A DNA stretch of 63,837 nucleotides, the filler included, from Octopus bimaculoides (Eukaryota), in the NCBI RefSeq assembly GCF_001194135.2. It is 5 parts of 5 records of this genome, joined end to end, with 100 filler letters (N's around TTAATTAATTAA, not from the genome) between each part and the next. Parts side by side here need not be neighbours in the genome. Positions count along the whole stretch, not along the records: positions 56,283 to 62,180 come from NW_026326131.1; 4 more parts are not named here. One strand, written 5' to 3'. The first letter of the stretch is position 1; every line of letters begins with the position of its first letter. This document shows, piece by piece, positions 56,283-62,180 of this stretch. The notes below the pieces were generated by a model. It ran no database searches. It saw only the letters and a list, made by a program, of their open reading frames with translations, and was not told the origin of the DNA. A program made the translations under genes and the position numbers.

Positions 56283-56720
56283 CATCATTTTTATCATCAT
56301 AATCATTATCATCATCATGATCGGCATTTTCATCATCATCATCATCATTATCATCATTTGGATCTTTATCATCGTCATCATGAGCATCACTCATGTTCAT
56401 CAACTTTATCAATGTTATTATCATTGTCATCACGAATGTAGGCTTTATCGTCATCATCATCAACATTATAATGAACACCATGATCTTCAACATCAGCCTC
56501 ATTATTTCCAGCATTACCATCATCATCCCAATCATCGTCCTCATCAACTGCATCATCATCATCATCTTCAGCATCTTCATCTTGAAGATAATGATGATTA
56601 TGATTATTATGTGGATGATCGTTATCATTAGCACTATCATCACCATTACCTGCATCATTTTCATCTAAGGACTCAGCGACCTCATATATTATTTCTAAAC
56701 ATGTCCCTTTTATAATGCAG

Positions 56721-56792
56721 ATATCTTAACTGGAATCAAATTAAAGACATCAAAGATGGATGGTTTGCAAATCTCTCCAATTTAAAAACATT
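56721..56792 (+). CDS. Leucine-rich-repeat exon A (72 nt, phase 2-2): (L)YLNWNQIKDIKDGWFANLSNLKT(L)
   Basis: ccttttataatgcag| acceptor, |gtaagt donor, open frame, typical 24-aa LRR. Confidence 0.9.
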
Positions 56793-58164
56793 GTAAGTTG
56801 CCTCTGTTTCATTCAGACTCTTTCACTCACGATATAATTCTCAATGTTTAATATTAAATCATTTGCCGATTTGTCTCATTCACNNNNNNNNNNNNNNNNN
56901 NNNNNNNNNNNNNNNNNNNNNNNNNNNNNNNNNNNNNNNNNNNNNNNNNNNNNNNNNNNNNNNNNNNNNNNNNNNNNNNNNNNNNNNNNNNNNNNNNNNN
57001 NNNNNNNNNNNNNNNNNNNNNNNNNNNNNNNNNNNNNNNNNNNNNNNNNNNNNNNNNNNNNNNNNNNNNNNNNNNNNNNNNNNNNNNNNNNNNNNNNNNN
57101 NNNNNNNNNNNNNNNNNNNNNNNNNNNNNNNNNNNNNNNNNNNNNNNNNNNNNNNNNNTGTCTTCTTCCTTTTATTCCCCCTGTTGTTCTTGTTCTTCCT
57201 CTTCTTCTTTTTCTCCCACCTATTCATCGCGTTTTCCTTCTTTTTCTTATTCTTTTATTGCTTCTGTTAATTTATAAGTATCATAATTATTATGATCATC
57301 ATCATCGTCATCATTATCTTCATCATCATGTTTGTTATTTATCATCATCAGCATCATTCTCATAAACATCATATTCATTATTGTCATCATAATTTTCATC
57401 GCCTGCGTCATCATTATCAACATTATTGTCTTTATCATCTTCTGTATCATCCTGATAATTTGAATTATCATAACCATTATTATCATCATCAACAGCATCT
57501 TTATCATCATCAGCGTCATAATCATCATCATCGGCATCATCACCTTTTTCTTCTTCCGTTGTTTCCTCTTATTCATCACGTTCTTCTACTTTTTCTACTT
57601 CATCTTATTTTATCTCTTCTATTAATTCATAATTATTATCATTATAATGATCATTATCATCTTCATCCTAATCACCTGATGATGATGCTAATGATCATGA
57701 TTATTATCTTTATCATCATCGTCATCATTATCAGCATCATCCTCATTAGAATCACCGTTTCCACCATTTTAATCATAAGCCACAGCCTCATTATAATGAA
57801 CATGATCATCATCATTTTCAACATCCTCATCATCATAATCATTGTCCTCATCAACTACATCTGCATCAACACCATCATTATCATCATCCTCATCATCATC
57901 ATCATCACTTTTATCATTGTCCCCATCATCACGATCATCATGATCATCATCGACGCCCTTGCCATCATCAAGATCACCGTTATAATCATCATCCTCACCA
58001 TCATAGTGATCAGAATCCCCATTATCATCACCATCTTCATATTCCTTTCTTCCTTATCCTCCTAATTATTCTCCATATTCCTCTCACTCTAATCACTCAA
58101 TATTGAACATTGTATCACGAAACTATTCTATATTATTTATAATCTTCTCCCCTTTATATTGCAG

Positions 58165-58236
58165 ATCTCTTCACCACAATCAAATTAAACACATCAAAGA
58201 TGTATGGTTTACAAATCTCTACAATTTAAAAGAATT
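58165..58236 (+). CDS. LRR exon B: (L)SLHHNQIKHIKDVWFTNLYNLKE(L)
   Basis: ttgcag| and |gtaagt; 72 nt; in frame. Confidence 0.9.
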
Positions 58237-59492
58237 GTAAGTTGCCTCTTCTGTTTTCTTCAGACTCTTTCACTCACGATATAATTCTCAGTGTTTGATA
58301 TTAAATCATTTGCCGATTTTTCTCATTCACATTAGTAAGATATATGTAAACTGCTTTCTTCTTCTTGCTTTCATTTTTCTTCTTATTATTATACTTATTC
58401 TTCTTCCTCTTTTTCTTCCTCCCTTCCCCTTCTGCTCCCTCTCCTCCTCCTCATTCTTCCCCTCCTCTCCTCCTCCTATTCATATTAATTCTTGTTCTAC
58501 AAATCTTTTTTTCTTCTTTTTCTTCTTCATCATCTTCCATCTCTCCTTCTCCTCCTCCTTTCTTCTCCTTCCTTCTTTTCTTCATCATCTTTACCTTGTT
58601 TTTCTTTTCCCTTCGCATCTCTTCCTTCTCGTTCTTCTTTCCTTTTTCTTGCTCACCGTCTTTTCGATTCTTCGTCATTTGATATTTATCAACATATTAT
58701 GATCATTAGCTTCATCTTCATTAACATCATCGCCATATTGTAATTCGCAGTGATAAAATTTTATCATCATCATCTTTGTCATTATCATGACCATTTCCTC
58801 ATCAATATAATCATTATCATTTTCATCATCATGATTTTCAACGAGATCAGCATTATAATCCTCATCATCGCCATCATCTTCATTATCATCAACATCATAA
58901 TAATCATTTCTTAAACATCAGCCTCAATATCATCTGCATTACCATCGTCATCACCATCATTATCAACATCACCATCATTATCATCATCACCATCATCATC
59001 ATCATCAGCGGCATCATCATCTTCAAAATCTTCGTCATGATGATAATGGTGATTATGATAATTATTATTATGATCATCATGAACATTATCATTATCCTTA
59101 CCTTTGCCAGCATCATTTTCCTCTGATGCACCAGCCAGGTAATAGTGAACATGATGGTAATATTCATCAACAACCTTATCATCATAATCATCGTTATCAT
59201 CAACTACATCTTCATCAACACGAGCATTATCATCCTCATCACCTTCACAATCGTCACCATCATCATGATCATTATCGTTAGACTTACTATCATCATGATC
59301 CCTATCATAATGATCATCATCACCATCATCGTCATAAGCATGCTCATAATCAACTTCATATTCCTTTCTTCCTTCTCCTCCTCCTAATTATTCTCCATAT
59401 TCCTCTCACTGTTATCACTCAGTATTGAATATTGTATCACGAAACTATTATTATATTATCTCATTTGAAAACTCCTCCCTTTCATAATGCAG

Positions 59493-59564
59493 AATTTTAT
59501 CATCGAACAGAATTACGGACATCGAAGATGGATCGTTTGCGAATCTCTACAATTTACGAAGATT
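59493..59564 (+). CDS. LRR exon C: (L)ILSSNRITDIEDGSFANLYNLRR(L)
   Basis: atgcag| and |gtaagt; 72 nt; in frame. Confidence 0.9.
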
Positions 59565-61146
59565 GTAAGTTGCCTCTGTTTTCTTCACACTCTTTCACTC
59601 ACGATATAATTCTCAATGTTTAATATTAAATCATTTGCCGATTTTTCTCATTCACATTCGTAAGACATATGTAATCTGCTTTCTTCTTGCTTTCATTCCT
59701 CTTCTTCTTCTTCTTCTTGCTCTACTACTCTTCTTTTTCTTCTCTTCCTCGTCCTTGTNNNNNNNNNNNNNNNNNNNNNNNNNNNNNNNNNNNNNNNNNN
59801 NNNNNNNNNNNNNNNNNNNNNNNNNNNNNNNNNNNNNNNNNNNNNNNNNNNNNNNNNNNNNNNNNNNNNNNNNNNNNNNNNNNNNNNNNNNNNNNNNNNN
59901 NNNNNNNNNNNNNNNNNNNNNNNNNNNNNNNNNNNNNNNNNNNNNNNNNNNNNNNNNNNNNNNNNNNNNNNNNNNNNNNNNNNNNNNNNNNNNNNNNNNN
60001 NNNNNNNNNNNNNNNNNNNNNNNNNNNNNNNNNNNNNNNNNNNNNNNNNNNNNNNNNNNNNNNNNNNNNNNNNNNNNNNNNNNNNNNNNNNNNNNNNNNN
60101 NNNNNNNNNNNNNNNNNNNNNNNNNNNNNNNNNNNNNNNNNNNNNNNNNNNNNNNNNNNNNNNNNNNNNNNNNNNNNNNNNNNNNNNNNNNNNNNNNNNN
60201 NNNNNNNNNNNNNNNNNNNNNNNNNNNNNNNNNNNNNNNNNNNNNNNNNNNNNNNNNNNNNNNNNNNNNNNNNNNNNNNNNNNNNNNNNNNNNNNNNNNN
60301 NNNNNNNNNNNNNNNNNNNNNNNNNNNNNNNNNNNNNNNNAACATCATTCTCATCATCATCATCGTCATCATCTTCATCATCACGATGTTCATCATCGTC
60401 CCCATCATTTTGTTATCTACAGCATAATTATCGTCATCATCATTATCATCGATACAAACTTCATCATAAATGTAACCCTATAACGTCATGATCAACATCA
60501 TCATTATGATCTTCATCACCATCCTAATCGTCATTATCATCAATTTCATTATCATCATCATCCTTATCATCATCATCATCAGCATCATCACAATCATTAC
60601 CATCATCATCATCACAATCATTACTATCATCATCATTTTCATCATCATATCATAATTACCATCCTCATCATAATTACCATCCTCATCATAATTACCATCC
60701 TCATCATCGTGAAGAGCTTCAACATTTTCAGCGTTTTCATGATGATGTTAAAGATTTTGATTATTATCTTTATCATCGCCATCATTATCATCTTCATCAC
60801 CATTTCCACCATCACTTTCCTCATAAGGAACAGCCTCATCATAACGAATATCATCATCATAATCATTTTCATCATCAACTCCATCTTCATCAACACCATC
60901 ATCATCACGTTCATCATTGACGTCATCATCATGCTCAGCATGATCATCATCGTCGTCCTTGCCATTATCAAGATCACCGTCATTATCATCATCTTCATCA
61001 GACTCCCCATCATCTTCACCATCTTCATATTCTTTTCTTCCTCATCCTCCTAATTATTCTCCACATTCCTCTAATCACTCAATATTGAACGTTGTATCAC
61101 GAATCTATTCTATATTATTTCTAATCTTCTCCCTTTTATAATGCAG

Positions 61147-61218
61147 AGAACTTTTCCGGAATCAAATCAAAGAAATCAGAGCTGGATCGTTTGCAAATCT
61201 CTACAATTTACGAAGATT
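61147..61218 (+). CDS. LRR exon D: (L)ELFRNQIKEIRAGSFANLYNLRR(L)
   Basis: atgcag| and |gtaagt; 72 nt; in frame. Confidence 0.9.
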
Positions 61219-61394
61219 GTAAGTTGCCTCTTCTGTTTTCTTCAGACTCTTTCACTCACGATATAATTCTCAATGTTAAACATTAAATCATTTACCGATT
61301 TTCCTCATTCACATTCGTAAGACTTATGTAACTTGCTTTCTTCTTTCTGCTTTCATTCTTCTTCTTGCTCAACTCCACTTTTTCTTCTTCCTTT

Positions 61395-61510
61395 TCTTTT
61401 TCTTCCATCGTACATCCTTCTTCTTTTTCTTCCATCGTACATCCTTCTTCTTTTTCTTCCATCGTACATCCTTCTTCTTTTTCTTCCATCGTGCATCCTT
61501 CTTCTTTTTC
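61395..61510. repeat. 27-bp minisatellite, about 4 copies, within an LRR intron
   Basis: tttttcttccatcgtacatccttcttc unit (MEEKEEGCT pseudo-ORF on the minus strand). Confidence 0.9.
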
Positions 61511-62101
61511 TTCTTTTTGTTCTGCTTCATCTTTATCCTCTTCTTTTTCTTCCTTCGCTCTTTCTTCTACTTCATTTTCTTATTTTTCTCTCACATATTC
61601 ATCGCGTTCATCACCTTCTTCTACATCTCCTACTTCTTAATGGTTATGATTATTGTCTTTATTATCATCGTCATCATTATTATCATCATCATAATCATCA
61701 TTAGCATCAACATTTCCACGCGCACTTCATTATAATCATCAGCCTCATCGTAATGAACAAGATCTTCATAATTATAAACATCCTCATCATCATAATCATT
61801 TTCATCATCAACTACACCCTCATCAACACCAGCGATATCATCATCATCACGTTCCTTATTGTCCCCATCATCATGATCGTCATCATCATAACCCTTTGCC
61901 ATCATCAAGGTCACCGTTATAATCAATATCGTCTCCATCAACTTCATCAGAATCCCCATCAGCAATACCATCTTCACATTCCTTTCTTCCTCCTCATCCT
62001 AATTAATCTCTACATTCCTCTCACTCTTATCACTCAATATTGAATATTGTATCACGAAACTATTCTATATTATTTCTAAACTTCTCCCTTTTATAATGCA
62101 G

Positions 62102-62173
62102 AAGTGTTTACGAAAATCTAATTACGGACATCAAAGATGGATCGTTTGCAAATCTCTACAATTTGACATATTT
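62102..62173 (+). CDS. LRR exon E: (L)SVYENLITDIKDGSFANLYNLTY(L)
   Basis: atgcag| and |gtaagt; 72 nt; in frame; the scaffold ends 7 nt later. Confidence 0.9.
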
Positions 62174-62180
62174 GTAAGTT

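What the first reader, a model, noticed from the sequence alone, without database searches (positions are those of the whole stretch)
56721..62173. Hidden tandem cassette array of single-LRR 72-nt exons, each duplicated together with its introns
Seen: five 72-nt exons with canonical AG/GTAAGT sites, all split at the same Leu codon (TT|A). They splice into LYLNWNQIKDIKDGWFANLSNLKTL-SLHHNQIKHIKDVWFTNLYNLKEL-ILSSNRITDIEDGSFANLYNLRRL-ELFRNQIKEIRAGSFANLYNLRRL-SVYENLITDIKDGSFANLYNLTYL. Intron flanks (~100 bp upstream, ~130 bp downstream) and the cryptic-repeat intron bodies are clearly homologous between units, so the whole exon+intron unit was recently amplified. The scaffold starts inside such an intron and ends just after a donor, so the array probably continues on both sides. 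Known: 72-nt phase-2 exons are normal for LGR-type and other typical-LRR genes. Unit-wise LRR exon amplification or shuffling has been described for Ectocarpus ROCO genes, and lamprey VLRs assemble 24-aa LRR cassettes. Inference: a rapidly expanding, modular LRR receptor (immune or chemosensory; an LGR, Toll-like or secreted LRR protein) whose symmetric exons can be skipped, gained or swapped without frameshift.
Basis: partly seen in the sequence, partly recalled or inferred. Interest (0 to 1): 0.88.

Follow-up and report, generated by a model that had tools for sequence, protein, structure and literature searches.

The report
Tandem one-repeat LRR exon array
This 5.9-kb scaffold is a fragment of a eukaryotic gene in which each 24-residue leucine-rich repeat has its own 72-nt exon; the exon+intron modules were copied in tandem and differ mainly at the codons for the binding face, a gene design already known from brown algae, ciliates and vertebrate receptors.

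Summary
Five 72-nt exons lie at 56721-56792, 58165-58236, 59493-59564, 61147-61218 and 62102-62173. Each follows ...TGCAG, precedes GTAAGT, starts with A and ends with TT, so any junction makes a TTA Leu codon. Spliced, they give five typical-class LRRs (Pfam LRR_8, E 7e-54). Both assembly gaps lie inside introns, so reading frame does not depend on them, but module number and order across them are unproven.

"The whole unit was recently amplified" is too simple:
- Splice-proximal intron flanks are the best-conserved part (88-97% among modules 2-5; module 1 upstream 76-83%).
- Microsatellite-derived intron bodies differ by 13-27%.
- Exons are only 65-85% identical.
- Exon differences cluster in the first 18 and last 9 nt, which encode the x positions of xxLxLxx, the concave binding face.

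Introns are decayed (TTC)n and (ATC)n tracts with 6-7% G. The Asp-rich antisense frames are not coding.

One-LRR phase-2 exon arrays are already described for brown-algal ROCO genes (72 bp), Tetrahymena (90 bp) and gonadotropin receptors. This is a new member of a known kind. The organism, the other protein domains and expression could not be determined. Interest is moderate to low.

The parts
56283..56720 (+). 3' part of the upstream intron: decayed (ATC)n body, then an acceptor flank. The flank is more diverged than in the other modules.
56721..56792 (+). LRR exon 1 (72 nt, phase 2-2): (L)YLNWNQIKDIKDGWFANLSNLKT(L)
56793..58164 (+). Intron 1. Conserved donor flank 56793-56883, cut by the assembly gap 56884-57158. 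Then two successive TTC-tail + ATC-body blocks, 57159-57542 and 57543-58029. Then the acceptor flank, about 58030-58164.
57159..57542 (+). Exon-less 'ghost' module inside intron 1: a TTC tail plus ATC body that runs straight into the next TTC tail, with no flanks and no exon between.
   Evidence: copy A vs copy B 75% over 332 nt; copy B vs intron 4 82% over 464 nt
58165..58236 (+). LRR exon 2: SLHHNQIKHIKDVWFTNLYNLKE(L)
58237..59492 (+). Intron 2 (ungapped, 1256 nt). Donor flank to about 58384, (TTC)n-type block to about 58680, (ATC)n-type block to about 59357, acceptor flank about 59358-59492.
59493..59564 (+). LRR exon 3: ILSSNRITDIEDGSFANLYNLRR(L)
59565..61146 (+). Intron 3. Donor flank, then the start of the TTC block, then the assembly gap 59759-60340, then the ATC body 60341 to about 61011, then the acceptor flank about 61012-61146.
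61147..61218 (+). LRR exon 4: ELFRNQIKEIRAGSFANLYNLRR(L)
61219..62101 (+). Intron 4 (ungapped, 883 nt). Donor flank to about 61366. TTC block containing a 27-nt minisatellite (61389-61513, 4.7 copies, 97% matches). ATC body. Acceptor flank about 61967-62101.
62102..62173 (+). LRR exon 5: SVYENLITDIKDGSFANLYNLTY(L)
62174..62180 (+). Donor GTAAGTT of the next intron. The scaffold ends here, inside the repeated flank.

Best explanation
The piece is an internal fragment of a eukaryotic protein-coding gene on the + strand, probably from an animal. The gene encodes a typical-class LRR solenoid, and each 24-residue repeat has its own 72-nt exon.

How splicing works (inferred from the sequence):
- Every exon has a perfect GTAAGT donor, a CTAAY branch-point candidate about 23-30 nt before the acceptor, a pyrimidine tract and CAG.
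- The introns are 0.9-1.6 kb of decayed (TTC)n and (ATC)n microsatellite with only 6-7% G. Apart from the true donor, they contain no other GTRAGT.
- Exons join at a split Leu codon (TT|A, LRR position 4). Each exon adds one turn of the solenoid.

How the array evolved (inferred):
- It grew and shrank by unequal recombination between the homologous introns, at least once in steps of two modules.
- After that, framework residues (L, N, I, F) stayed under purifying selection. The exposed x positions of the xxLxLxx beta-strand, which form the concave ligand-binding face, diversified faster than the neutral intron bodies.
- The roughly 130-150 nt next to each splice site stayed nearly identical, through splicing constraint, gene conversion or both.

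Shown: exon structure, LRR identity, module homology, the divergence pattern, non-coding introns.
Inferred: transcription and serial splicing, the ligand-binding role, the recombination mechanism, selection as the cause of the pattern.
For: - Exon anatomy, symmetric phase and identical junction codon.
- LRR_8 at E 7e-54. The best solved-structure matches are LRRC15, IGF acid-labile subunit, LGR5/4, TLR13/3 and LRRTM.
- Exon HMM hits only the five sites.
- Divergence tiers. Downstream flank 92-97% identical. Upstream flank 88-94% among modules 2-5. Intron bodies 13-27% divergent. Exons 65-85% identical.
- Variable alignment columns: exon 31/72 against downstream flank 10/88 (P 8e-6), and exon 32/72 against upstream flank 19/94 (P 0.001).
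- Within the exon, first 18 + last 9 nt vary at 20/27 columns against 13/45 in the middle (P 3e-4).
- Residue variability peaks at x5, x7, x8 and x3, with 4-5 different residues among the five repeats.
- Pooled Nei-Gojobori proportions. Concave x codons: pN 0.64, pS 0.39. Remaining codons: pN 0.13, pS 0.25.
- Two-module periodicity: 13 of 26 informative upstream sites group modules 1,3 against 2,4, and self-BLAST aligns 57286-59047 with 60344-62003.
- An exon-less ghost module in intron 1 and a 27-nt minisatellite in intron 4 show ongoing intron-level recombination or slippage.
- Introns have 6-7% G and one GTRAGT each.
Against: - No transcript evidence, and no start, signal peptide, caps or other domain on the scaffold.
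- No protein closer than 49% identity among 5.8 billion, so neither the gene nor paralogues could be confirmed elsewhere.
- Only five short exons: the dN/dS numbers come from about 14 synonymous sites per pair and from non-independent pairs.
- Short-read assembly of 95%-identical flanks may have produced consensus-like flanks, which would inflate their identity. It may also have mis-ordered the three contigs across the gaps.
- Microsatellite-derived intron bodies may mutate faster than ordinary DNA, so they are an imperfect neutral standard.
Confidence: 0.72

Rival explanations
1. Repertoire generator. The symmetric exons are not all spliced in series but are used combinatorially, either by regulated exon skipping or choice (as in brown-algal ROCO isoforms or Dscam) or by somatic cassette use (as in VLR). 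The conserved 130-150-nt flanks would then be the control elements.
For: - Every exon can join any other, giving the same TTA codon.
- The flanks are more conserved than the intron bodies and the exons.
- Variation is concentrated on the binding face.
- Alternative splicing of 72-bp LRR exon arrays is reported in Ectocarpus (PMC11378527).
Against: - All five exons have equally strong, canonical splice signals.
- The flanks show no structure beyond shuffled controls: z from +0.7 to -2.2, with only one of five below -2.
- No complementarity between flanks and no inverted copies.
- No Rfam match near threshold.
- VLR-type cassettes have no splice sites. Here every unit has them, and all units lie on one strand.
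- No transcript data.
Confidence: 0.12
2. Non-functional or artefactual array: a decaying pseudogene fragment or satellite-like repeat that happens to carry LRR exons, or a scaffold built by mis-joining near-identical modules from several loci.
For: - The scaffold is only 5.9 kb, with two gaps that both begin in repeated sequence. Contig and scaffold ends fall inside the conserved flank.
- No homologous annotated protein above 49% identity.
- A ghost module lacks its exon.
Against: - All five exons keep exactly 72 nt, an open LRR frame, both splice sites and every framework residue, despite 15-35% nucleotide divergence.
- Framework codons show pN 0.13 against pS 0.25, i.e. purifying selection.
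- Exons 2-3 and 4-5 are linked by uninterrupted sequence.
Confidence: 0.12
3. The real gene is on the minus strand. The ATC and TTC intron bodies read as long Asp/Glu-rich open frames in antisense, which could encode an acidic low-complexity protein.
For: - The minus-strand GAT frame stays open for up to about 160 codons and is similar between modules.
- The triplet register is kept for 360-480 nt.
Against: - In-register triplets are 39% ATC plus all nine one-step neighbours at 3-10% each. No single change of GAT gives a stop, so open frames are expected without selection.
- Departures from ATC are even over the three positions: 26, 25 and 34%.
- Between paralogous copies pN/pS is 0.7-1.1, and differences are spread evenly over codon positions.
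- Frames are broken by stops and register shifts in every intron.
- No Pfam family matches.
Confidence: 0.02

Closest known systems
Brown-algal ROCO / type I LRR exon arrays (Ectocarpus, Saccharina; PMC3341825, PMC11378527)
   Same: - One LRR per 72-nt exon.
- Phase-2 introns.
- Tandem exon+intron repetition.
- Diversifying selection on concave-face residues.
- Modules usable in different numbers.
   Different: - The algal exon reads GxxPxxLxxxxxLxxLxLxxNxLx. Here the exon starts at x5 of a typical-class repeat (xLxxNxIxxIxxxxFxNLxNLxx), so both the LRR class and the intron position within the repeat differ.
- No intronic or antisense LRR copies here.
- This sequence is 34% G+C with microsatellite introns.
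- No ROC-COR domain is visible.
Tetrahymena 90-bp LRR exon arrays (PMC6564038)
   Same: - Tandem arrays of equal-length exons separated by phase-2 introns.
- Exon+intron units recognisable at the nucleotide level.
- Unequal crossing-over as the proposed driver.
   Different: - 90 bp rather than 72 bp.
- Introns there are about 50-260 bp and linked to a LINE-like element. Here they are 0.9-1.6 kb of decayed trinucleotide repeats.
- No retroelement is seen on this scaffold.
Animal typical-LRR genes with one repeat per exon: glycoprotein-hormone receptors/LGRs and Slit (PMC11378527 citing Koo 1991; PMC6642158 citing Little 2002)
   Same: - Typical-class 24-residue repeats.
- LGR5 and LGR4 are among the best solved-structure matches.
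- Exons of similar size with all introns in phase 2 (gonadotropin receptors). LRR-exon modularity is also reported for Slit; no phase data for Slit were retrieved.
   Different: To my knowledge, the repeats and introns in those genes are anciently diverged, with no intron homology between units. Here the flanks are 88-97% identical among modules 2-5. No 7TM, LDLa, LRRNT/CT or EGF parts are visible.
Lamprey/hagfish VLR cassettes
   Same: 24-residue LRRV-like modules whose variation sits on the concave face.
   Different: VLR donor cassettes are not exons and are copied somatically into an incomplete gene. Here every module has canonical splice signals, all are on one strand, and they form an ordinary exon series.
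PRDM9-type zinc-finger minisatellite arrays (analogy from general knowledge)
   Same: Near-identical tandem modules in which only the ligand-contacting codons are hypervariable, i.e. concerted evolution plus positive selection.
   Different: Those repeats lie within a single exon. Here each module carries its own intron, and the fold is LRR rather than zinc finger.

Membership tests
Typical-class LRR (Pfam LRR_8 / LxxLxLxxNxLxxLxxxxFxxLxx) | Significant match to the LRR profile, with a 24-residue period and conserved L1, L4, L6, N9, I/L11, I/L14, F19 and L22 | tested here: met
   LRR_8 at E 7e-54 with 4 stretches. All framework positions are invariant or conservative in the five repeats.
One-LRR-per-exon, phase-2 symmetric exon array | Consecutive exons of equal length, each encoding one repeat, all bounded by phase-2 introns | tested here: met
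   Five 72-nt exons, each AG|A...TT|GTAAGT. Splicing itself was not observed.
Brown-algal ROCO type I LRR exon | Exon motif GxxPxxLxxxxxLxxLxLxxNxLx, attached to a ROC-COR GTPase | tested here: not met
   The exon motif here is xLxxNxIxxIxxGxFxNLxNLxx, with no GxxP and a different intron position (against PMC3341825). ROC-COR cannot be tested because it is not on the scaffold.
LGR / glycoprotein-hormone receptor | LRR ectodomain followed by a hinge and a rhodopsin-type 7TM domain (some members also have LDLa) | not testable with these tools
   Only five LRR exons are on the scaffold. The LGR5/4 similarity (E 1.8e-40) is no better than that to LRRC15, ALS or TLRs.
Toll-like receptor | LRR ectodomain with LRRNT/LRRCT caps, a TM helix and a TIR domain | not testable with these tools
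   None of these parts lies on the scaffold. The TLR13/3/7/8 matches are generic LRR matches.
VLR-type somatic cassette system | Donor cassettes without splice sites, in both orientations, flanking an incomplete germline gene | tested here: not met
   Every module has a canonical acceptor, branch-point candidate and donor. All five are on the + strand, with no minus-strand copies.
Dscam-type mutually exclusive exon cluster | Docking-site and selector RNA pairing in the introns, and exons that cannot be joined to each other in series | tested here: not met
   There are no inverted repeats or complementary flanks, and the flanks do not fold better than shuffled controls overall. The exons are frame-compatible in series. 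A docking site outside the scaffold cannot be excluded.

The most novel reading that the evidence does not exclude
An invertebrate-type animal carries a germline array of near-identical LRR exon modules. Their strongly conserved intron flanks would act as splicing-control elements, and their symmetric exons would be used in variable combinations. This would be a Dscam-like or ROCO-like way of making many LRR receptors from one locus, with binding-face patches kept hypervariable by selection or by patch-wise gene conversion.
Probability: 0.1. Interest if true: 0.75.

Novelty: new member of a known kind. Interest (0 to 1): 0.35.

Why it matters
If the locus is expressed, it would be another independent case of LRR binding domains built and remodelled one exon at a time. 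The known cases are brown algae, ciliates and vertebrate hormone receptors.

This case has an unusually clear signature: nearly invariant splice-proximal introns around exons whose binding-face codons are close to saturated with change. That makes it a compact natural example of concerted evolution combined with diversifying selection, and a candidate fast-evolving recognition receptor.

With only 5.9 kb, no organism, no transcripts and no other domains, it adds no new principle for now.

Tried and rejected
- **Antisense acidic-protein gene in the ATC/TTC tracts.** Rejected on triplet spectrum, even per-position decay, pN/pS of 0.7-1.1 and no Pfam hit.
- **Structured RNA or snoRNA/miRNA in the conserved flanks.** No Rfam match near gathering score. 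Folding energies are not better than shuffles.
- **Extra or inverted LRR exon copies in the introns, as in Ectocarpus.** None found.
- **Finding the source organism or more modules.**
  - Exact-pattern scans of metagenome contigs with a 26-nt invariant flank and with a degenerate exon core gave 0 hits.
  - Look-ups of three window ORFs in the assembly collection gave nothing.
- **Protein relatives.** Only four hits, the best at 49% identity over 56% of the query. These lie on eukaryotic contigs carrying retroelements, and their LRRs are in multi-repeat ORFs without per-repeat introns. They show no DNA similarity to this piece, so they say nothing about this gene's ends.
- **The search of protein representatives and structure prediction.** A single exon frame is only 26 codons between stops.
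- **Literature search on tandem exon duplication in LRR genes.** Added nothing.


Full report
**1. What is there**

The piece (56283-62180) contains three contigs joined by two N runs: 56884-57158 (275 N) and 59759-60340 (582 N).

Five GTAAGT motifs occur. Each lies exactly 72 nt after a ...TGCAG acceptor, giving exons at 56721-56792, 58165-58236, 59493-59564, 61147-61218 and 62102-62173.

- Every exon begins with A and ends with TT. All introns are therefore phase 2, and any exon joined to any other recreates a TTA Leu codon.
- Only this frame is open in all five exons. The other two frames carry stops. At the exons' base composition, 115 stop-free codons have a chance of about 8e-5.
They match Pfam LRR_8 at E 7e-54.
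- An HMM built from the exons finds only these five sites, all on the + strand.

**2. The gaps**

Both gaps lie in introns, 91 nt and 194 nt downstream of a donor. No reading frame crosses them, because frame is carried by splicing of symmetric exons.

The order of sequence blocks on both sides of each gap is the same as in the ungapped introns 2 and 4: donor flank, TTC-type block, ATC-type block, acceptor flank.

- By collinearity with intron 4, gap 1 should be about 230 nt, close to the 275 N written.
- Gap 2 looks about 350 nt longer than collinearity with intron 2 predicts. A hidden module cannot be excluded.
- An alternating pattern of shared variants (modules 1,3 against 2,4) argues against a single hidden module in either gap. 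This argument is indirect.
- Only exon 2-3 and exon 4-5 adjacency rests on continuous sequence.
- Contig 1 ends 91 nt into the conserved donor flank, and the scaffold ends 7 nt into it. This is typical of assembly breaking in a repeat, and it suggests that more copies exist.

**3. Anatomy of a module**

- Downstream of each exon, about 148 nt are nearly identical between modules: 92-97% over the first 90 nt.
- Upstream, about 135 nt are conserved: 88-94% among modules 2-5 and 76-83% for module 1.
- A further 200-300 nt upstream are alignable at 71-87%.
- Between the flanks lies a (TTC)n-derived block and then an (ATC)n-derived block.
- The sense strand of the introns has only 6-7% G against 24-29% C. 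Each complete intron has a single GTRAGT, the real donor.
- A CTAAY branch-point candidate and a pyrimidine tract precede each acceptor.

**4. The introns are not antisense coding sequence**

The ATC register is kept for 360-480 nt. The minus-strand GAT frame gives Asp-rich open frames of up to about 160 codons that resemble each other between modules. Four results argue against coding:

- In-register triplets are 39% ATC plus all nine single-step neighbours at 3-10% each. No single change of GAT creates a stop codon. Departures from ATC are even across positions: 26, 25 and 34%.
- Between paralogous copies pN/pS is 0.7-1.1, and differences are spread evenly over codon positions.
- Every intron has stops and register shifts.
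- No Pfam family matches.

These are decayed, still slipping trinucleotide repeats. TRF periods of 6-21 nt, all multiples of 3, fit this.

**5. Divergence pattern**

| Region | Measure |
|---|---|
| Exons, whole | 65-85% identical |
| Exon, first 18 nt | 28-72% identical |
| Exon, middle 45 nt | 82-96% identical |
| Exon, last 9 nt | 33-100% identical |
| Intron bodies | 13-27% divergent |
| Splice-proximal flanks | 3-12% divergent (module 1 upstream flank up to 24%) |

Variable alignment columns:
- Exon 31/72 against downstream flank 10/88, P 8e-6.
- Exon 32/72 against upstream flank 19/94, P 0.001.
- Hypervariable ends 20/27 against exon middle 13/45, P 3e-4.

In LRR numbering the split Leu is L4. 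The positions with 4-5 different residues among the five repeats are x5, x7, x8 and x3. By established LRR structural knowledge, these are the exposed residues of the xxLxLxx beta-strand on the concave face. L, N, I and F framework positions are invariant.

Pooled Nei-Gojobori values are pN 0.64 / pS 0.39 for the concave x codons and pN 0.13 / pS 0.25 for the rest.

The unit is therefore not simply a recent copy:
- Framework codons are constrained.
- Binding-face codons change faster than the neutral-looking intron bodies.
- The flanks are either selected (exon definition of a small exon in a long low-complexity intron) or homogenised by conversion that selection keeps out of the exons.

The sample is small: about 14 synonymous sites per pair, and the pairs are not independent. 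Flank identity could also be inflated by assembly consensus.

**6. History**

- Half of the informative upstream sites (13 of 26) group modules 1,3 against 2,4. Self-BLAST aligns 57286-59047 with 60344-62003. Both point to duplication of a two-module block.
- Exon sites give mutually incompatible groupings. Exon 3 groups with exon 5 at nt 24-25 and with exon 4 at nt 65-69. The exons are mosaic, or convergent, relative to their introns.
- Intron 1 contains a TTC-tail + ATC-body block that runs straight into a second such block with no exon between. This is a ghost module left by exon loss or by intron-internal duplication.
- Intron 4 holds a young 27-nt minisatellite.

All of this fits unequal recombination and slippage in the introns.

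**7. What the protein is**

The repeats are generic typical-class LRRs. The best solved-structure matches are LRRC15, the IGF acid-labile subunit, LGR5/LGR4, TLR13/3/7/8 and LRRTM. None stands out.

Among 5.8 billion proteins only four pass E 1e-3, and the best is 49% identical over 56% of the query.

- That hit and a second one lie on eukaryotic contigs carrying retroelements, both from a single ENA assembly.
- They are short LRR proteins with a Cys-rich C-terminal cap.
- Their LRRs sit in multi-repeat ORFs, not one per exon.
- They share no DNA similarity with this piece.

The organism and the remaining domains could not be determined. "Animal-type extracellular LRR" is an inference from the repeat class and these weak relatives.

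**8. Comparison with what is known**

- Brown-algal ROCO and other type I LRR genes have 72-bp phase-2 exons, one LRR each. They show exon shuffling, positive selection on concave residues and alternative splicing (PMC3341825, PMC11378527).
- Tetrahymena has tens of thousands of 90-bp LRR exons with phase-2 introns in nucleotide-level repeat units, attributed to unequal crossing-over (PMC6564038).
- Gonadotropin-receptor LRR exons are of similar size with all introns in phase 2 (cited in PMC11378527). Exon modularity of LRRs in Slit and NLR genes is documented (PMC6642158).

The present array works like these, but it fails the ROCO exon-motif test: it has a different LRR class and a different intron position within the repeat. 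It also lacks the defining features of VLR cassettes and of Dscam-type clusters (see membership tests).

It is best filed as a new member of the known kind "one-LRR-per-exon tandem arrays". Its local peculiarities are microsatellite-filled, G-poor introns and flanks that are more conserved than the exons.

**9. Verdict**

The evolutionary reading needs refinement. The functional class (immune, chemosensory, LGR or TLR) is untested. Interest is moderate to low unless long-read and transcript data show a large, variable or combinatorially spliced array.

Noticed in passing
window 57159-57542, followed by 57543-58040: Intron 1 holds two successive TTC-tail + ATC-body blocks with no exon or splice flanks between them. 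This is a 'ghost' module, from either an exon deletion or an intron-internal duplication.
   Followed up: partly
window 61389-61513: A 27-nt minisatellite (TCCTTCTTCTTTTTCTTCCATCGTACA) with 4.7 copies and 97% matches, inside the TTC block of intron 4. It is much younger than the surrounding sequence.
   Followed up: no
all introns, 56283-62101: Extreme strand asymmetry. The sense strand has 6-7% G against 24-29% C, and each complete intron has only one GTRAGT, the true donor. Whether G-poverty is selected (few decoy splice sites) or is just a by-product of ATC/TTC repeats is open.
   Followed up: partly
window 57286-59047 vs 60344-62003; informative sites -279 to -22 upstream of the exons: Modules 1 and 3 share variants against modules 2 and 4, giving a two-module higher-order periodicity. 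The exon variants do not follow this pattern and are mutually incompatible: exon 3 resembles exon 5 in its middle and exon 4 at its 3' end.
   Followed up: partly
window 56883/56884 and 62180: Contig 1 and the scaffold both end inside the conserved donor flank, at +91 and +7. The assembler evidently could not get through this repeat. That hints at more copies in the genome, and it warns that flank identity and module order may be partly assembly products.
   Followed up: no
L001 2618-2797, 6585-6791, 9881-10294; L002 8079-8324: The nearest protein relatives (P0001, P0004; both from ENA assembly ERZ25069580) are short LRR proteins with a Cys-rich C-terminal cap. They lie on contigs carrying retrotransposon and piggyBac-type ORFs. 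Their LRRs are in multi-repeat ORFs, unlike the one-per-exon design here.
   Followed up: partly
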